A stretch of DNA of 64,000 nt from Sminthopsis crassicaudata (taxonomy: Eukaryota), in contig NC_133617.1 of NCBI RefSeq assembly GCF_048593235.1, positions 419,968,958 through 420,032,957 of the forward strand. The letters are read 5' to 3'. A program made the position numbers and the translations under genes. Under the pieces are notes generated by a model, which worked only from the letters and a program-made list of their open reading frames with translations, did not search any database and was not told where the DNA came from. Below, in pieces: positions 3,860 through 35,012 of this stretch. Position 1 is the stretch's first letter. Every line of letters begins with the position of its first letter.

Positions 3860-4490
3860 AAGGATGCACAAGTACAAAAATGTTTGTAGCAGCTCTTTTG
3901 TGGTGACAAAGAACTGGAAATTGAGTGGATGCCCATCAATTAAGTAATGTCTGAATTAAGTTGTAATATTTGAATATAATGGAATATTATTGTTCTATAA
4001 GAAATGATGAGCAGGCTGGTTTTGGAAAAGCCTGAAAAGACCTACATGAAAAGATGCTGACTGAAGGGAGCAGAACCAGGAGATCCTTGTTCACAATAAT
4101 AGCAAGATGGTCAACTATGATAGACTTAACTCTTCTCAGCAATACAGTGATTCAAGACAATACCAACAGACTTGGGATGGAAAATGTCATCCATATCCAG
4201 AGAGAACTATGGAGACAATGCAGATTGAAGCATACTATTTTTTTGTTTTGTTTTTGTTTTTTTCTTTTTGTTCTAATTTTTTTCACAACATGATTAATAT
4301 GAAAATATGTTTAAAATGTATACATGTATAGATATAGATTATATATATATATATGTTGTTTGTTGTCTTGGGGAGGGAAGAAATAAAGGAAAGAAGGGAA
4401 AGACTTAGAACTCAAAATCTTACAAGAATGAATATTGAAAACTATCTTTGCATGTAATTGGAAAAACAAAATACTATTGAATTTTTTTTA
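3860..4490 (+). mobile_element. L1 ORF2 end plus 3'UTR fragment
   Basis: aaaatgtttgtagcagctctt...aagaactggaaattgagtggatgcccatcaat (KMFVAAL...WK..GCPS) followed by 3'UTR. Confidence 0.8.
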
Positions 4491-4759
4491 AATTAGGGAA
4501 ACTAAGGTAGAAGCAAAAAAATACAAATTCAGAAGCCATTCAACTTACAAATATACAATCCATAATTAATGCAATGGGCTTGATTAGCCCACAGTTTTTT
4601 GAGCACACATTTCATCATTCCTGTCTGATAGACACTAATTCAAAATCATCTCTTCACTTCAGCATAGTTCTCAAGAATAGTCAGATTTAAATCTGGTACA
4701 GAAGAAAAAGATAAAAACATGGAAAATGAAAATAATAAAAATTGAAGGGGATGTAGGAA

Positions 4760-21619: not shown

Positions 21620-24450
21620 TGAGAAATGCGCGCTGTTATTGCTCCCATTTTATTGCCGCGGAAACTGAGGCCAGCAGAAGCGACGTTGCTTGCCTAGATC
21701 CCATAGCTAAGAAATGCCTGCAGACCCCTTAGAACTTTCCGATTTCAGCTCGGAGCTCTATTCCCTGGGCCACCTGCTGGCTAACGTTCCTCTGCTGGAA
21801 TTGTACGTTTTGAGTAATGGAATATCAGTCTTAAAAGAACTAAAGTTAAGAGCAGCACGGGCCAGTGAAAAGCTGAGTGGTGGTGGTGAGGACAGAGATC
21901 CCACTTCTGGCCTTCACGAGGAGCGGAGAAGGGGATGATAATTCGGAACTCAAAAAGGATTTTTTTTTAAGGTTTAAAAAACATATAAATTGTTTTAAAT
22001 CGGGTTGGATTAAAAGGCCTCTAAGGACCTCCGGTTTAAGTCGATGATAGTTTGATTTACAACGAGGTAATGCAAGTTTTAAAGAAAAACAATAGCGCTC
22101 TCAAAGGGAAGCGGAGCGCAGTTTCTGGGTCCGCAGGGACCCCCGCATCGGTCCGACCAGCCGCTACTCCGGCTTCTTCAGAGGAAGAACGCAGCAGAAG
22201 GGAACAACGAGTCAGCTGCTTTCACCGGGCCGGACACCAGGCCAGTATCCCGCTTCCCAGAATGCAAAGGGCGGAAGGCTTCTCGAGACTTCATTTCCCA
22301 GGATGCCTCGAAAGAAAGATGTTCCAGGGCTTCGTTTCCCCGGATGTAAGGGCCCGGTGTATGAATGGTGCGGGATGAGGGTGTGGGAGGTCACACATGC
22401 GCAGTGCTGCTGCGGTGGTGCGTGGGTCTGAGCGGAGACGCGGCTGAGCTAGGCATTCGCCCTAAAGATAGGGAGGCTGAGGAAAGGGGCTGGGCTTTTG
22501 GCAGGAGCCCGGGCCGAGCAGGGTTGGGCCGCTGCTGCAGGGAGGGCGCGGGTCCTCCTTCCCACACTCCTGCAGGTACCGACCCAACCTGAGCTGAAGA
22601 CGGCCCCACCCATCCCAGGCTACCCCTGTCCCGGGGCGCCCCTCCCCCCTGCACGTCCGGCCCCGGCATGCGGACCTTCTCCCCCACCCCCACCTCCCCA
22701 TCCCGGCCTCCACCGCCCCTCACACACACGATTCACACCCCCAGCCCTGCCCCCTCCCCCGGATCCTGCACGCCCCCAGCCCTGGCCCCTCCCCCGGACC
22801 TCCTCCCCAACTTTGCCTCCCTCCACCACCCCTTTTATACACAAAGCACATCCCCAGCCTTGACCCCTCCCCCAGACCCATCTCGTCCCAAGCCCAGCCT
22901 TCTTCCGGCCCCTTTCCTCTCACACACTCAGCACATCCTCAATCTCGATTCTTCCCCCAGTCCCTACACCCCACTTCGGTACTCCTCCGTCCCAACCCCC
23001 CCCACCCTCACCACTGCCACTCAGTGAACATCCCCAGCTTGCCCCTCCTCCAGACCCTCCCCTCATTCCCGCTTTCCTCCACTGCCCTTCAAGCGAGCCC
23101 TGGCCCCTCCCCCTCTCCTTCCCTGCCCTGACCCCTGAACCCGACCCTCTACACCCACACGCACTCACGAACACGCACACGCGCGCTCCACAGCTTGAGT
23201 CTTTAGAAGGCTGCTACCACAGCTCTCCCCCTTCCCCCCCATCCCGTCCGTCCACCTGCCCGTCCCCCACCTCCCCATATTAGCACCGCACGTACCCAGA
23301 CACGTTGGCCCTCTCACCCTGGCCCGCCCCCCTCCTTTAAGGACTCAGTCCCGTCCGGACTCCCAGAATGTTGACCCGCACCCACCCCAGTCCCTCCGCC
23401 AGCCCTGCCCGACCCTTGGCTGCTTTCCTCCCCACTCCCCTATACATAGGCCCTCCAGAGCGGCTGCCCCAGGTAGGTTGCACCGTGCATCTGTCCTGAG
23501 TTATCGTTACTCCCACTCTAACCCTGGCCCGAGCACCGCCCTCCCCACGCCTCCCGTCAGTGTCTCAGGGTTCGCCTTGGGAGGGACTGAGCGGGCCCCT
23601 CCCGCTCCTGGGGCCCATTCACAGCCCCTGACTCCCCGCCCTTGGTGGTCATTCACATGTCTGGGAGGGGAGCGCTCCTCCCGCCTGAGTCCTGCTCCTC
23701 CTCTGTTCCAGCCCCACAGGCCCCTGCTGGAGGTCCCCACCCCCTAAGGGCAGGCACTCTGGGACTGCGCTGCCTCTCCCTGGGCGCTCCTCCCTCCCTC
23801 AGCCGCCCTGTGAGCACTGTCCCTGTGGGACAAGCAGCCTGCGCCGACGGCGCCAGCTCCCTCGGTCTCCCCGTCTTGGCCTGTGAACACCTCATCTCGG
23901 ATCCCTTTCTCCCTGGTACCCCAACCCCTCCCCATGCCCCGAGCGTCAGCCTGCCTCAGCCTGTCTGTTTTTATCTATGTCCCGTAGGCCATCTGTGACA
24001 GCCCCCTCCCCCAAGTCTCTCCTTTTCTGGGCTCCGTGCTCGGGTAGAGAGAGGAGCCTGAATGATGCCCCGGGGCCGGGCCTGGACCCAGCAGGAGATC
24101 AGCTGCCTCCTGACTCTGATCCAGGACTCTGGGGAGGTCACGCTGCTCATGGCCTCCACTTCCAGGCCTAATGAGGCCTTGTGGCAGTCCATCTCCCAAG
24201 GCCTGGGGGCGTCAGGCTATGGCAGGAGTGTGGCTCAGTGCCGGTCCAAGTGGAAGGCCCTGAAGCAAGCCTTCTACTCCGAGTGGGAGACCAGCCGCCA
24301 GGCGGGCGCTCCCTCCTCTCAGCCTCCCCCTCACTACCGGACCATGAAGAGGCTCTGGAAGGCTGCGGGAAGACCGGTTTTCGGAGAGCGTCGCCTGCCG
24401 GGTAAGGACAGAGCCCTGGGGACAGGCCTGGGAGAGACACACTCCCAGGG
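21620..24450. promoter_or_regulatory. CpG island: promoter and first intron of the Myb/SANT-like gene
   Basis: Abrupt rise in GC and CpG. A likely non-coding first exon ends at donor CAG|GTACCG (22575/22576); an acceptor lies at 23987/23988. Confidence 0.75.
22245..22350 (+). promoter_or_regulatory. Three ZNF143 (SBS/SPH)-like motifs
   Basis: TTCCCAGAATGCA (22254), ACTTCATTTCCCAGGATGC (22288) and TTCCCCGGATGT (22336). Confidence 0.65.
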
Positions 24451-26533
24451 CTAGCAGTGCCTCCTCCCAGGGTCCTGGCTTATTCCCGGCCTCCCCAGAG
24501 TTAGTGAGGCTCCTGCCTGGGAAGCATGGCGCCCAGCTGGAAGCCCCTCCCACAGCGAAGCCTCCGGGCGAGTGGGTGGCTGGGGACAGAGAAGGGGAGC
24601 CACATTTGATCCACAGTCATCCATTAAGTGCTCATTGGACACCAGACACTGACTTTTCATTGGAGATTCAGACATAAATAAAAGCTCGTGATGCAGTCTT
24701 GGGGAGGACGCAGAGGTTCCTGGAGCTGGTAGGCTGCCCTATCTTAGGCTGACATTCTTTCTCCACTACCCAGGCTCCGATACAAACCTTGAAACGGCGC
24801 CAGCACCTTGTGCCAAGAAAGAATCCTCCCGTGAGTACAACTGCTGTGGAGAAGAGAGCTGGGGGAGGCTGTGGGGACTCGGTGGGAGAGAAGGACCGAG
24901 GCGCTCGTCCGTGTGCCAGGGCAGCAGATGCCCGGGTCGGTGCCCGCTGTGTTCTTGGCCCCAGCTAGCTGCTGGGAATTCAGAGACAGAAATGAAAAGG
25001 TTCCTGCTCTCCAGGCTCTTCTTTTCTTCTGGGAGAAGGCAACATCGTTTGAGGAGCACCAGACAACTAGTAGCTGGTGTGGACAGAGCAGGAAGAGGAG
25101 AAGGAAGAGAAGGCAGTGCCTAAGTTGAGCTTTAAAGGGAGCTCATTCCGCCTAGGCTAGGGCCTGCAACTTGCCACAGACTTAGTGCCCAAGTGCCACA
25201 GCAAGCATGATTTTCAGGGATTAAAACATGCACATTTTATAAAAAGTGTCCTCTTCTGCATGAGTCCCCCTCCTAAGCGGGTTGTAAGCTACAGGACCGA
25301 CTGCCTAGTCTTTCCCTAACATTAGCACTTGTGGGGAAGGTTAAGTCGGGAAAGCCACGGAAGGGGTCAGGGTTGGGATCAGCAGGTAAATCTGAGTGCA
25401 TCTGCCCTCCTTCTGCAGCTCCTGAGGAGAAGCAGGCCAGCCCTGCCCCCACCCAGATTCCAGGTAAAGCTGAGGAGCTTCACTTTTCTTGGGTGATTTG
25501 GGGTGTTCCTAAGACCATGCTGGGAGGGGGGCATGATGGGGAGTGAAGTCTCTAGAGGAATAAAGATATTGAGGAAATAGAAAGCATGAGGAAGAAAACC
25601 CCCTGCGGACGAGAGTTAAATGTGTGGGGTAGAGAACCTGGAAGGTGGGGGTCCTTTGGCAGAATGCTATAGCCTGGGAAAGGGTGAGCACCACTGACTG
25701 GCTGTTGTTCCCCCAAGTTCTCATCTCATGGTATCCCCACTCCCTCTCTTCCCTCACCCCCCCACTTCCCCAGCTCTTTGGAGCCTTTCCCATCATGATA
25801 GTCAGCCAGCTTTGCCCAGTGCGCCCTTCTCTATTTTCAAGAGAGCTGAGACCAGCCCTGTCTTGGAGCTAGATGAACAGGGCTGAGTTGGGAGTAAAGG
25901 GGACAGAATCCTCATGGCAGTGGAGGAGTATGAGGAGGTGGAGCCCAGCAGGACTTAGCATGGTTTTTTTGCCTCCCCCTACCCAAGAAGAGCCTCCAGC
26001 TTTGGTGCCGGAGATCCCAGTCCGGCCAGATCTGGTCCCTCAGGGAGCCAGAGAAGAGCCCACCCATGTGTCAGCACTGCAGGGTAAGCTTCCTCCCCGC
26101 CCCTCCCTCACTGGGGCTCGGGCCTGGGCGTGGGGGTGGCAGGAGGAGGCCTTGACCTGCCTGGCGTACTGTTGCAGGCCCTGGGGTGGTGAGCCTCCTC
26201 CAGAACATGCAGGAGCTTCTGGTGCAGATCTTGCGAACGTCAAGGCAGCAGCAGGCGCTGCTCGAGAGCTTGGCCCAAGACACGGTCTCCCACCTGCATC
26301 TGCTTTCTGACGGCCTGGGCCAAATGGGCCAGACCCTGCAGGCCCTGCTGATGCACAGCCCCAGCTGGCAGAACCCCCGGTCCCTGCTCACGCCCGCACC
26401 TGCCCCTGCTCGACCTCACCCCCCGGCCCTAGGCCTACACGCTCCCCATTCCCCCTCCATTCCTGTTGCCCCTGCCAGCCCCTGCCTAAAGGAAGAGACC
26501 ATCCTGCCCCCACCCAGGTTTGCACCATTATGA
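24062..26533 (+). CDS. Uncharacterised Myb/SANT-like (Myb_DNA-bind_4/trihelix-type) DNA-binding protein with a C-terminal coiled coil, 297 aa
   Basis: Exons 24062-24401, 24774-24830, 25419-25463, 25988-26083 and 26178-26533; all GT-AG; 894 nt in one frame. An in-frame TGA lies immediately before the ATG. The N-terminus GRAWTQQEI..LL..I...LWQSIS..L...GYGRSVAQCRSKWKALK fits the Myb/SANT-like pattern. Confidence 0.8.
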
Positions 26534-27340
26534 ATCTGGACCCACTCCCTTCAAGTGGAGAGTGCAAGCCAATAAGACAACTCTCTCACCTCCTTTGTCC
26601 TGCTGGTGAATACAGAGTCCCGGGTCCCCCCACCCCAAGTAGTCTGTTCCCAAGACTGGAGACTTTTATGTAAATGTCCTCATATTTTAGAAAATATTTA
26701 ATTTAAAAGAAACATGCATCCTTTTTTTACAGTGAGAGATTATTTGATTAAAAAAATTTAAACAGCAGGAGAGGGGACTGTGTCCCTGGATCCACCCTGT
26801 TCTTTCAATTTCTTGGAAGCTGTCTCAGGGACTGAGGACAAAGGCTGCAGACACTGGTCATCTTGCTTGTCCTGGATCAGAATGATCCTGGCTTCCCCCT
26901 AACCTGCAGACATCCTTGCTCATAGGAGCTCTCACACCTGTGCTTGCTCTCTCATGCTATTAGGTCTTCTCACAGCTGTGTGTGTGCTTGCCCCCCAACC
27001 CCCCCAACACTGCCACCACTTCCTGTATTTCTGAAGAAACAACTAGAGGAGGGGAGTTGGGGCCGGAACTGGTTAACCTCAGAGGGACAGAGATGGGAGG
27101 ATTCATGAAAGCAGGGAGTTGGAAGGTGGAGTGGGTGTCTTGTCCAGGCTAGAAGCCTCCCCTGCCTCCTAGTATGGAGAGAGGCCACTGTCTCTGGGGG
27201 GGTACGCTCCCCTGCTATGTCCCGTGGTCATAACTCAAATGAAAACAACTGTGGGTCGGAAGGGAAGGTCAGGATGGGACTTCTTCCTACGGACAATGGC
27301 CTCCCTCTCAAATGTGTTTGATGCTGGGATCTGGGTCCTG

Positions 27341-28335
27341 TCACTCATCTCCTGGCTGGCTGTTGGCATAGTCCTCGTTAGGGAAGGCCGCCCGACGGGT
27401 CTGAGAGCCCACCGAGGCGTAGAGTTCAGGCTCCGGGAGCCGGGGCTTGGGGGTAGACTGCTCAGGCTCCAGCATCATCACCACCTCTGAGTATTTAATG
27501 GGGGACCCTGCATTGGGTCCTGGGGGGCGACCCTGAGGAGGCTGCAGCTGCAGGCTGGCATAGCACATTGCTTCTTCTCCCACCTGGGAATAAAGACAGG
27601 GTAGGGGATGTGAAGGGGACCCCAAGATCCTCATCCCTAGATTCACCCGAATTGGGCACCAGGTCAAACTTACTCGGGGGATGTCTCCTGCTGATTGCTC
27701 CTGAAGAATAGGCCCTGGCTTCTGCGGGAGCCGCCCTGAGATAGGATGGAACAAGAGCCTCATTCATGAGTTCCCAAATCCCTCTCTCCCACCCTTTTCA
27801 CTTGCTCTGGAAAACCCTTTTGCCTTACCCTGGTTCTTTCCCCCTCACCTGTTTGCAGGTACGTCAGGTTCCCATACAGTGGTACCTCTTCCACAGGCCT
27901 CTTAGGGCTACGAAATAAAGGAGAGGGGAGGGAACAAGTAAGATGGGAAAGCTGATGGTGCAAAAACGTCCCTCTGGAGTCTGAAGGATTAAGGGTGGCA
28001 GAGGGAAGGGCCTCTGTCCGGTGTCTTTCACCAGCAGTCTCACCTGTCCTGCTCCTGCAAAGTCTTGTTCTTTTTTCTGGTCCATCGGATTAGGTGTTCA
28101 GCCAGTGCCAAAAGGAGCAACAGAGTCACCACGCCCAGCAGGGCCCACAGCCCAAAGGCACACTGCAAGTCCGGGAACCCTGAAAGCCAGTCACTGGGCC
28201 ATCACCACACCCTCTTCTTGGCCAAGCCCTCCCCCTGTAGCCATACTGCCCCCCAACCTCCAACCTGCTCACACCCACCCGCCCTCCCATCCCCACCTCA
28301 CCAGCTGTAACATTGGAGCATTTCTTATCGTTCAT
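27341..28335 (-). CDS. SIT1: Signaling threshold-regulating transmembrane adaptor 1, 177 aa
   Basis: Exons 28335-28302, 28179-28044, 27907-27849, 27735-27674 and 27583-27341; all GT-AG. TM segment GLWALLGVVTLLLLLAL; motifs EEVPLYGNL, MCYASL, IKYSEV, ELYASV and YANSQP match SIT1. Syntenic position. Confidence 0.95.
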
Positions 28336-34700: not shown

Positions 34701-34987
34701 GGCTGGACGCGCTGAGAATGAGCCCCGTGGAGTTGGTGCGCGTGGCGGCGCACTGCCTGCGTAACTATCCTTCTCTGACTAAGGACGGCCTCGCCGCGCT
34801 CCTTCCACTCGACTCTTCCACCGAAGTAGAAGGGCTTCTTGGCGGGGCTACAGGGAGCTGCGACATAGGCCAGACGCACATGCGTGCGTGGCACTTTCTG
34901 CCAGAGGTCCGGGGACTTTCCCCTAGGCGCAGAATAAGGAACATGTCCCCCGTTTGTAGCCTAGGCAACAGGCCTTCAGCAAGCGCC
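34701..34987 (-). ncRNA. RMRP: RNase MRP RNA, ~287 nt
   Basis: The reverse complement reads GGCGCTTGCTGAAGGCCTG..CCTAGGCTAC...CCTAGGGGAAAGTCCCCGGACC...CCGCCAAGAAG...TAGTTACGCAGGCAGTGCG...CACGGGGCTCATTCTCAGCGCG, collinear with human RMRP. A TTTT terminator follows at 34697-34700. Confidence 0.97.
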
Positions 34988-35012
34988 TCAAGACGAGGGC
35001 ACCACTCCAGCG

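What the first reader, a model, noticed from the sequence alone, without database searches (positions are those of the whole stretch)
24062..26533. Intact orphan Myb/SANT-like gene next to SIT1: candidate domesticated Harbinger-type accessory protein
Seen: a five-exon, 894-nt frame with canonical splice sites, a CpG-island promoter, a non-coding first exon and a poly(A) signal. It encodes an N-terminal W..E..L...W..IS..L...GY.RS..QCR.KW..L domain, a Pro/Glu linker and an amphipathic C-terminal helix. Known: this Myb/SANT-like fold (PF13837-type) occurs in PIF/Harbinger accessory proteins and in their domesticated derivatives (NAIF1, MSANTD family, ZSCAN29). I recall no named protein-coding gene between CD72 and SIT1 in human or mouse. 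Inference: this is an unnamed transcription/chromatin factor that is intact in marsupials and may be lost or mis-annotated as a lncRNA in some eutherians.
Basis: partly seen in the sequence, partly recalled or inferred. Interest (0 to 1): 0.8.

Follow-up and report, generated by a model that had tools for sequence, protein, structure and literature searches.

The report
Transposon-type Myb gene missing from placentals
This is a real, expressed and strongly conserved gene for a small DNA-binding protein of the kind carried by Harbinger jumping genes; marsupials, birds, reptiles and salamanders/caecilians have it, placental mammals apparently do not, and nobody has studied it.

Summary
Five coding exons (24062-26533, + strand) join through GT-AG introns into an 894-nt frame of 297 aa. 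The protein has an N-terminal Myb/SANT-like trihelix domain (PF13837, E 9e-15), a disordered Pro/Glu linker and one long, confidently predicted C-terminal helix.

The gene is not an orphan. NCBI annotates it as an "uncharacterized LOC" in every marsupial found, and in birds, turtles, crocodilians, squamates, salamanders and caecilians. The window matches the fat-tailed dunnart copy.

- **Expression:** an opossum transcript contig carries the same four coding junctions.
- **Selection:** dN/dS against opossum is 0.12 overall, 0.006 in the Myb domain and 0.02 in the helix.
- **Neighbours:** SIT1 and RMRP lie next to the gene. CD72 was not confirmed inside the window.
- **Placentals:** no eutherian or monotreme protein turned up. 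Two eutherians show no relic within 10 kb 3' of SIT1.

The Harbinger idea gained direct support. A recently active gecko PIF/Harbinger element encodes a homologue (E 2e-20) whose first intron has the same position and phase. A domain tree, however, puts that protein in a neighbouring subfamily, not as sister.

No named protein is close: MSANTD1/2/4/5/7 and UTF1 are at most 26% identical. Chicken's "UTF1" label looks like a misnomer.

Verdict: a new member of a known kind, a domesticated Harbinger Myb-like gene.

The parts
22000..23550 (.). CpG island, the likely promoter region upstream of the gene
   Evidence: 200-bp windows with GC at least 0.5 and CpG observed/expected at least 0.6. The window background is GC 0.43 and o/e 0.29.
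23988..24061 (+). 5' untranslated part of the first coding exon. An acceptor-like AG sits at 23986-23987. Any upstream non-coding exon is unverified.
   Evidence: The first 80 nt of opossum mRNA contig L001 align here and begin within 3 nt of the acceptor-like site. An in-frame TGA lies at 24059-24061.
24062..24401 (+). Coding exon 1: start codon and the whole Myb/SANT-like trihelix domain (residues 1-113; structured core about 24077-24367)
   Evidence: PF13837 at E 9e-15. GT-1 structures 2JMW/2EBI at E 1e-5. AF2 helices 10-102. W8, W41 and W64 are invariant in 30 orthologues. dN/dS is 0.006.
24774..24830 (+). Coding exon 2 (57 nt, phase 1-1), linker; skipped in a koala isoform
   Evidence: The junction is present in opossum mRNA contig L001. 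Koala isoform X2 lacks it. GT-AG intron.
25419..25463 (+). Coding exon 3 (45 nt, phase 1-1), Pro/Glu linker cassette
   Evidence: GT-AG intron. The junction is in L001. Koala isoforms X1 and X2 lack it.
25988..26083 (+). Coding exon 4 (96 nt), linker. A tandem NAGNAG acceptor (25988 or 25991) gives the 297-aa or 296-aa form.
   Evidence: P0178 (296 aa) differs from the window protein only by this one Glu.
26178..26533 (+). Coding exon 5: conserved long amphipathic helix (residues 180-238, about 26178-26353), Pro-rich tail and TGA stop
   Evidence: AF2 single helix 180-238 with pLDDT above 90. 23 columns in the helix are invariant. dN/dS is 0.02. 11 of 17 a/d heptad positions are hydrophobic.
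26534..26770 (+). 3' UTR with the ATTAAA poly(A) signal at 26747-26752
   Evidence: The 3' end of the opossum mRNA contig aligns to about 26694. ATTAAA was located. No AATAAA lies before 27589.
27341..27763 (-). Context: last exon of the neighbouring gene SIT1, convergent with the Myb gene; the two stop codons are about 800 bp apart
   Evidence: E 2.8e-46 to koala SIT1, and 92 SIT1 hits in all. Trichosurus and Monodelphis show the same arrangement.

Best explanation
This is a genuine single-copy protein-coding gene. RefSeq annotates it only as 'uncharacterized LOC' (LOC141550082 in the fat-tailed dunnart). It has kept its place beside SIT1 in three marsupials, and in chicken it lies on chromosome Z next to a C-type-lectin gene.

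The protein is a two-module adaptor. The N-terminal Myb/SANT-like trihelix keeps the three core tryptophans and a basic recognition helix, so it most likely binds a specific DNA motif. A flexible, alternatively spliced Pro/Glu linker joins it to a roughly 60-residue amphipathic helix. That helix is as strongly constrained as the DNA-binding domain and most likely mediates self-association or the recruitment of a partner. In Harbinger Myb proteins and their domesticated derivatives, the C-terminal part is the part that binds the nuclease-type partner.

The gene most likely arose by domestication of a PIF/Harbinger Myb-like accessory gene no later than the tetrapod ancestor, and was then lost on the eutherian stem.

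Shown here: the gene structure, the fold, the conservation, purifying selection, a spliced transcript in opossum, homology to a transposon-encoded protein, and absence from eutherian protein sets and from the region beside SIT1.

Inferred: DNA binding, the role of the helix, the direction of transfer between transposon and host, and the loss itself.
For: - **Gene model:** five GT-AG exons, 894 nt.
- **Domain:** PF13837 at E 9e-15 and plant GT-1 structures at E 1e-5.
- **Fold:** the AF2 model has a trihelix and one long helix, both at high confidence. Foldseek gives TM 0.68-0.75 by query to MSANTD7, GT-1 and GT-4.
- **Orthologues:** found in 13 marsupials and in turtles, birds, crocodilians, squamates, salamanders and caecilians at E 1e-160 to 1e-57. 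They share two invariant blocks, including W8, W41 and W64.
- **Transcript:** opossum contig L001 holds the intron-less 894-nt CDS with the same four junctions.
- **Selection:** dN/dS is 0.12 overall, 0.006 in the Myb domain and 0.02 in the helix.
- **Synteny:** SIT1, a 235-aa gene and a RhoGEF gene follow it in Trichosurus and Monodelphis. SIT1 and RMRP are in the window. In chicken it is on chrZ head-to-head with a Lectin_C gene.
- **Transposon kinship:** the gecko element is 14.6 kb with 16-bp TIRs, 3-bp TSDs and a DDE_Tnp_4 ORF, in five copies at 99.8-99.96% identity. It encodes P0292, which matches the window protein at E 2e-20 and 99.75% profile-profile probability. Bird orthologues are 43-47% identical to it. 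Intron 1 falls at the same aligned position and in phase 1 in both genes.
- **Immobility here:** the window holds no transposase-like sequence, no second copy and no flanking TIRs.
- **Literature:** the C-terminal part of Harbinger Myb proteins binds the nuclease, and the three tryptophans are needed for DNA binding (PMC7282668).
Against: - In the careful domain tree the proven Harbinger protein falls in a neighbouring subfamily (97/98 split). The backbone around the orthologue clade is unresolved. No direct transposon progenitor was identified, and capture of a host gene by a transposon is not excluded.
- Profile-profile comparison aligned only the Myb domain, not the C-terminal helix.
- No DNA-binding or interaction data exist.
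- Transcript evidence comes from a relative, not from this species.
- Eutherian absence rests on protein databases and on 10 kb beside SIT1 in two species. Whole genomes were not searched.
Confidence: 0.65

Rival explanations
1. It is an old cellular trihelix transcription factor that never was a transposon gene. On this reading the similarity to the gecko Harbinger protein reflects either the shared ancient Myb_DNA-bind_4 superfamily or capture of a host gene by the transposon.
For: - The gecko element is unusual in carrying two Myb genes, so one could be a captured gene.
- The careful tree does not place the transposon protein as sister.
- The shared intron fits transfer in either direction.
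Against: - The Myb domain is far closer to the transposon protein (31-47% identity, E 2e-20) than to any named cellular protein (26% or less).
- Several of the nearest relatives outside the orthologue clade are multi-copy genes in gecko genomes.
- MSANTD1-4 and NAIF1, which share this architecture, are accepted Harbinger derivatives (PMC9392472).
Confidence: 0.22
2. It is the pre-eutherian orthologue or direct ancestor of UTF1. On this reading UTF1 moved to the KNDC1-VENTX locus and diverged fast in eutherians, which would explain both the eutherian 'loss' here and the eutherian-only appearance of UTF1.
For: - NCBI names the chicken member UTF1, and two other pipelines call theirs UTF1 or UTF1-like.
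- The architecture is the same: an N-terminal Myb/SANT-like domain and a C-terminal helix. Foldseek aligns mouse UTF1 residues 53-326 to query residues 1-239.
- UTF1 is reported as eutherian-only and of unknown origin (PMC3706607). The two distributions are complementary.
Against: - The Myb domains are only 21-23% identical to mouse and human UTF1 (E 0.17-0.41). That ranks below MSANTD7, MSANTD2 and plant GT factors.
- No UTF1 appeared among 120 hits at E 0.01 or better in a search whose length window included it.
- The locus differs.
- The same architecture also occurs in MSANTD1 and in plant GT-3.
Confidence: 0.05
3. It is a decaying or non-functional lineage relic: an annotation artefact or a pseudogene with a chance open frame.
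For: Only that the gene has no name and no published function.
Against: - dN/dS is 0.12, and 0.006 and 0.02 in the two structured blocks.
- Long stretches are invariant from salamanders and caecilians to marsupials.
- Spliced transcript contigs exist in opossum and chicken.
- The intron position is conserved from chicken to marsupial.
Confidence: 0.01

Closest known systems
Myb-like accessory protein of PIF/Harbinger transposons (here the 375-aa protein P0292 of a 14.6-kb Eublepharis macularius element)
   Same: Both have an N-terminal PF13837 trihelix, an acidic or proline-rich linker and a C-terminal helical region. The match is E 2e-20, with 31-47% identity in the Myb domain. Both carry the LMAST and WKAAGRP motifs. 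The first intron has the same aligned position and phase.
   Different: The window gene is single-copy and has kept the same neighbours across the marsupials examined, with no TIRs, no TSDs and no DDE_Tnp_4 gene nearby. The C-terminal helices do not align. The transposon protein lies in a neighbouring subfamily in the tree.
[quoted passage not shown] 2022, PMC9392472)
   Same: They are the same kind of gene: immobile, syntenic, under negative selection, and built on a trihelix domain. MSANTD1 also aligns across both modules in Foldseek.
   Different: Domain identity is only 17-20% to MSANTD1/2/4. The distribution differs: this gene is found in tetrapods but not in eutherians. The 2022 screen started from human proteins and so could not find it.
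Human MSANTD7 (A0A1W2PQ72)
   Same: It is the best Swiss-Prot structural match to the Myb domain (TM 0.68, 26% identity), and its domain also sits at the very N-terminus.
   Different: 26% identity compares with about 62% between the marsupial and amphibian orthologues in the Myb domain. Its sequence could not be fetched, so the relation was not tested further.
UTF1 (undifferentiated embryonic cell transcription factor 1)
   Same: It has a Myb/SANT-like domain and a C-terminal helix or leucine zipper, and the chicken member of this family carries its name.
   Different: Domain identity is 21-23%. The locus differs. UTF1 is reported as eutherian-only (PMC3706607).
Plant GT-1/GT-3/GT-4 trihelix transcription factors (PDB 2JMW, 2EBI)
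   Same: The fold is the same, with phmmer E 1e-5 to the solved GT-1 domain. A long C-terminal helix follows the trihelix.
   Different: They belong to another kingdom, identity is 20-28%, and there is no orthology.

Membership tests
Pfam PF13837 Myb_DNA-bind_4 (Myb/SANT-like trihelix) | Profile match above the curated gathering score | tested here: met
   55.3 bits against a cut-off of 27, E 9.1e-15, covering profile positions 2-88 of 89
Pfam PF13837 Myb_DNA-bind_4 (Myb/SANT-like trihelix) | Helical trihelix fold with three conserved core tryptophans | tested here: met
   AF2 helices at 10-23, 38-50, 57-81 and 90-102. W8, W41 and W64 are invariant in 30 orthologues. TM 0.68-0.75 by query to GT-1, GT-4 and MSANTD7.
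Domesticated Harbinger Myb-like gene | Homology to a Myb-like protein encoded by a bona fide PIF/Harbinger element (TIRs, 3-bp TSD, DDE_Tnp_4) | tested here: met
   The gecko element was verified. Its protein matches at E 2e-20 and 99.75% profile probability. Intron position and phase are shared.
Domesticated Harbinger Myb-like gene | Immobile: single copy, same neighbours in distant species, no TIRs or transposase at the locus | tested here: met
   SIT1 is the neighbour in three marsupials. The chicken gene is on chrZ. The window has no transposase hit, no second copy and no flanking TIR pair.
Domesticated Harbinger Myb-like gene | Purifying selection on the coding sequence | tested here: met
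   dN/dS is 0.12 overall, 0.006 in the Myb domain and 0.02 in the helix, dunnart against opossum
Domesticated Harbinger Myb-like gene | Phylogenetic nesting among transposon-encoded Myb proteins | tested here: inconclusive
   The proven transposon protein is in a neighbouring subfamily. The backbone is unresolved with 115 columns. The mobility of the nearest relatives is unknown.
Domesticated Harbinger Myb-like gene | C-terminal region binds a nuclease-derived partner (HARBI1 type) | not testable with these tools
   Known for NAIF1, HDP2, ALP2 and Ping Myb (PMC7282668). Here there is only a conserved helix.
UTF1 | Orthology by sequence: closest named relative, reciprocal best match | tested here: not met
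   21-23% identity at ranks 16 and 23 in the domain Foldseek search. Absent from 120 hits at E 0.01 or better.
UTF1 | Position between KNDC1 and VENTX | tested here: not met
   The locus holds SIT1 and RMRP. Marsupials have KNDC1-VENTX without UTF1 (PMC3706607).
MSANTD1-4 / NAIF1 | Sequence membership of one of the five described orthologous groups | tested here: not met
   17-20% identity to MSANTD1, 2 and 4. NAIF1 and MSANTD3 appear only as weak matches.

The most novel reading that the evidence does not exclude
Eutherian UTF1, held to be a eutherian invention of obscure origin, descends from this tetrapod gene by relocation and very fast divergence. A weaker form: UTF1 functionally replaced this gene when it was lost on the eutherian stem. 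Either way, the 'eutherian-specific' pluripotency and germ-cell factor would gain an ancestor that can be studied in marsupials, birds and axolotl.
Probability: 0.05. Interest if true: 0.8.

Novelty: new member of a known kind. Interest (0 to 1): 0.5.

Why it matters
[quoted passage not shown] It therefore cannot contain a gene that placentals lack.

This gene would add a tetrapod-wide member. Its two structured modules are almost frozen over about 350 million years, which argues for an important function in marsupials, birds, reptiles and amphibians. Placentals apparently dispense with that function, or have handed it to another factor.

The gene is small and has clear orthologues in chicken, axolotl and opossum. 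It also suggests a testable partner question: self-association, or binding to HARBI1. In addition, the chicken gene name 'UTF1' looks wrong.

Tried and rejected
- **Earlier findings:** searches by place and by words returned nothing.
- **Pfam on neighbouring ORFs:** the ten longest other ORFs of the window gave no family.
- **Protein atlas:** the searches gave only generic PF13837 clusters or scores below 0.9.
- **Exact-protein look-ups:** these failed for the dunnart, wombat and sugar-glider isoforms. dN/dS therefore rests on one pair.
- **CD72:** the chicken Lectin_C protein and C-type-lectin motifs found nothing in the window upstream of the gene. CD72 is unconfirmed there.
- **Eutherian relics:** tblastn and six-frame profile searches in the tree shrew (L004) and the rhinoceros (L005) gave only chance-level hits. 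The best E-values were 0.24-3, against 2e-69 and 5e-37 for the positive control. A recurrent weak hit at L004 16345-16464 was rejected as leucine-rich noise, at 2.9 bits in the profile search.
- **UTF1 and MSANTD7 sequences:** none could be fetched with the capped searches. Their relation rests on Foldseek identities only.
- **SRA runs:** the runs behind the transcript contigs could not be traced to a tissue.
- **MSANTD7 at this locus:** rejected from my own recollection that the gene lies beside HSPA14 on human 10p13. This was not tested here.
Full report

Yes. Reading 23700-26900 and joining the segments 24062-24401, 24774-24830, 25419-25463, 25988-26083 and 26178-26533 gives an 894-nt frame of 297 codons plus stop. 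Every intron is GT-AG, and the exon phases are 0/1/1/1/1. A TGA lies in frame directly before the ATG, so the start is well defined.

The three internal exons are 57, 45 and 96 nt. All are multiples of three, and koala isoforms skip one or two of them. Exon 4 has a tandem NAGNAG acceptor, which explains the 297-aa and 296-aa forms.

A CpG island at about 22000-23550 meets the usual criteria, against a window background of GC 0.43 and CpG observed/expected 0.29. The only poly(A) signal within 1 kb of the stop is ATTAAA at 26747.

The claimed non-coding first exon is not verified. An acceptor-like site at 23986-23987 lies within 3 nt of the 5' end of an opossum transcript contig, which is suggestive only.

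**2. What does it encode?**

Exon 1 matches Pfam PF13837 (Myb_DNA-bind_4) at E 9.1e-15. Weaker matches go to Myb_DNA-binding and MADF. It also matches the solved trihelix domain of Arabidopsis GT-1 at E 1e-5. Exon 5 has no Pfam family.

I ran AlphaFold2 on an alignment of 30 orthologues. The first sequence was P0178, which is identical to the window protein except for the NAGNAG glutamate. The model shows:
- a helical trihelix at residues 10-102, mostly at pLDDT above 85;
- a disordered stretch at 106-178, with 14 Pro and 9 Glu in 67 residues;
- one uninterrupted helix at 180-238, at pLDDT above 90;
- a disordered Pro-rich tail.

In the best heptad register, 11 of the 17 a/d positions of the helix are hydrophobic.

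**3. Whose gene is it, and is it an orphan?**

It is not an orphan. An exhaustive HMMER search with exon 1 found 19 cluster representatives below E 1e-30. A full-length search returned orthologues at E 1e-160 to 1e-57. They came from 13 marsupials and from turtles, many birds, crocodilians, squamates, salamanders and caecilians. Nearly all are named 'uncharacterized protein LOC...' by NCBI.

The window protein equals Sminthopsis crassicaudata LOC141550082. The window is therefore the fat-tailed dunnart or a very close relative.

The alignment shows two near-frozen blocks. One is the Myb domain, with an invariant LLMASTSRPNEA run and invariant W8, W41 and W64. The other is the C-terminal helix, with 23 invariant columns. 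The linker and the tail vary freely.

**4. Is it expressed and under selection?**

A 1135-nt opossum contig assembled from a public sequencing run (L001) contains the intron-less 894-nt CDS. It translates exactly to the annotated opossum protein, and all four coding junctions fall where the window model puts them. A chicken contig likewise carries the spliced CDS.

I compared dunnart with opossum by Nei-Gojobori:

| Region | dN/dS |
|---|---|
| Whole CDS | 0.115 (0.12-0.14 by other methods) |
| Myb domain | 0.006 |
| Helix | 0.020 |
| Linker | 0.34 |
| Tail | 0.29 |

Differences fall 28/13/72 on codon positions 1/2/3. The intron after the Myb domain is phase 1 at the same place in chicken.

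**5. Surroundings**

- The ORF at 27341-27763 on the minus strand is the last exon of SIT1 (E 2.8e-46 to koala SIT1). It is convergent with the Myb gene.
- RNase MRP RNA lies at 34706-34988 on the minus strand (176.9 bits).
- In Trichosurus and Monodelphis the gene is followed by SIT1, a 235-aa gene and a RhoGEF gene. This fits what I recall of the human 9p13.3 order.
- In chicken the gene lies on chromosome Z. It is head-to-head, 610 bp apart, with a Lectin_C gene, and is followed by a DUF3522 gene.
- I could not find CD72 in the 24 kb upstream within the window. 'Between CD72 and SIT1' is therefore unverified here.

**6. Eutherians**

No eutherian or monotreme protein appears among the 120 best full-length hits.

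I then used a 204-aa natural 'mini' orthologue, P0013, in which the Myb domain is followed directly by the helix. This query shut out most long bird isoforms and let the list run down to E 0.01. All 120 hits were birds, turtles, crocodilians, squamates, marsupials or salamanders.

In Tupaia, Diceros and Loxodonta no gene is called within 10 kb 3' of SIT1. In marsupials this gene ends about 1 kb from SIT1.

In the two eutherian loci with DNA, tblastn with seven orthologues and six-frame profile searches found nothing better than E 0.24-3. The window control scored 2e-69 and 5e-37.

Loss on the eutherian stem is the best reading. Whole genomes and the full interval were not searched.

**7. The Harbinger link**

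The nearest relatives outside the orthologue clade include genes present as identical copies at many loci in the gecko Eublepharis macularius. Fetching five of these loci showed a 14.64-kb unit. The copies are 99.8-99.96% identical and sit on four chromosomes. The unit has:
- perfect 16-bp terminal inverted repeats exactly at its ends;
- 3-bp target-site duplications in four of the five copies (TCC, TGA, TGA, TAA);
- a DDE_Tnp_4 ORF (E 1.4e-31);
- two PF13837 genes.

It is therefore a recently active PIF/Harbinger transposon.

Its 375-aa Myb protein (P0292) matches the dunnart protein at E 2e-20 with 31% identity, and shares the LMAST and WKAAGRP motifs. Profile-profile comparison gives 99.75% probability over the whole Myb domain. 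Bird orthologues are 43-47% identical to it. Its first intron lies at the same aligned position and in the same phase 1.

By contrast, the window holds no transposase-like sequence, no second copy and no flanking inverted repeats.

Two cautions apply:
- A careful maximum-likelihood tree of 39 Myb domains puts the proven transposon protein in a neighbouring subfamily (97/98 support). The relations around the orthologue clade stay unresolved.
- The C-terminal helices do not align.

Domestication is therefore the favoured reading but is not proven. Capture of a host gene by the element remains possible.

**8. Named relatives**

Foldseek against Swiss-Prot models, using the domain-only model, ranks the hits as follows:

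| Hit | Identity in the Myb domain |
|---|---|
| Human MSANTD7 | 26% |
| Plant GT-1/GT-4/GT-3 | 22-28% |
| MSANTD2 | 20% |
| MSANTD5 | 19% |
| MSANTD1 | 17% |
| Mouse and human UTF1 | 21-23% |

With the whole model, MSANTD1, GT-3, MSANTD7 and UTF1 align over both modules. The 'trihelix plus long C-terminal helix' layout is therefore a family trait.

No named protein is close. The gene belongs to none of the five groups described as Harbinger Myb-derived in vertebrates. That study started from human proteins (PMC9392472) and so could not have found a gene missing from placentals.

NCBI's name 'UTF1' for the chicken member conflicts with three things: the low identity, the different locus, and the report that UTF1 is absent outside eutherians (PMC3706607). 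I treat the name as a misnomer. A UTF1 connection remains a low-probability novel reading.

**9. How it most likely works**

This part is inferred. The three tryptophans required for DNA binding in Harbinger Myb proteins (PMC7282668) are invariant here. So are basic residues of the long third helix: R55, R61, K63, K65 and K68. Sequence-specific DNA binding is therefore likely retained.

In Harbinger Myb proteins and in NAIF1, HDP2 and ALP2, the C-terminal part binds the nuclease-type partner. The equally constrained 60-residue helix here is the obvious candidate for partner recruitment or self-association. The alternatively spliced linker would set the spacing between the two modules.

I therefore propose a DNA-bound adaptor that recruits a partner to chromatin. 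The partner could be itself, HARBI1 or a chromatin complex.

**10. Verdict**

The gene is already annotated but unnamed and unstudied. It is best filed as a new member of the known class of domesticated Harbinger Myb-like genes, notable for its extreme conservation and its apparent loss in placental mammals.

Noticed in passing
window 34706-34988 (-): A complete RNase MRP RNA gene (RF00030, 176.9 bits, E 7e-51). It lies downstream of SIT1, which fits the human SIT1-RMRP order.
   Followed up: partly
window 27341-27763 (-): The last exon of SIT1, with its tyrosine motifs (YASL, YSEV, YASV, YANS). It is convergent with the Myb gene, so the two 3' ends are only about 0.6-0.8 kb apart.
   Followed up: yes
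window 25985-25993 (+): A tandem NAGNAG acceptor at coding exon 4. It adds or removes one glutamate, giving the 297-aa or 296-aa isoform.
   Followed up: partly
L006 1107-15749 (Eublepharis macularius; also L007-L010): A recently active 14.64-kb PIF/Harbinger transposon with perfect 16-bp TIRs, 3-bp TSDs and a DDE_Tnp_4 ORF. Unusually it carries two Myb_DNA-bind_4 genes: one resembles the ZSCAN20-type repeats, the other resembles the window gene. A fragment of a third Myb-type gene lies at 4322-4687 (-).
   Followed up: partly
proteins P0090 (koala LOC110193308), P0098 (platypus LOC103167602), P0042 (coelacanth): A second uncharacterised clade with the same layout, an N-terminal PF13837 domain and a conserved C-terminal helix. 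It is present in marsupials, a monotreme and the coelacanth, and groups with 97/96 support in the domain tree.
   Followed up: no
L002 7543-12755 and L003 (chicken chrZ): The chicken orthologue is named UTF1 by NCBI and carries an 87-aa N-terminal extension that other species lack. It sits head-to-head, 610 bp away, with a Lectin_C gene. One transcript contig spans both spliced genes, which suggests a bidirectional promoter with overlapping transcripts.
   Followed up: partly
window 1-22000: This stretch is AT-rich, with many AATAAA motifs (127 in the whole window against 72 expected). No C-type-lectin signature was found, so CD72 was not located inside the window.
   Followed up: partly
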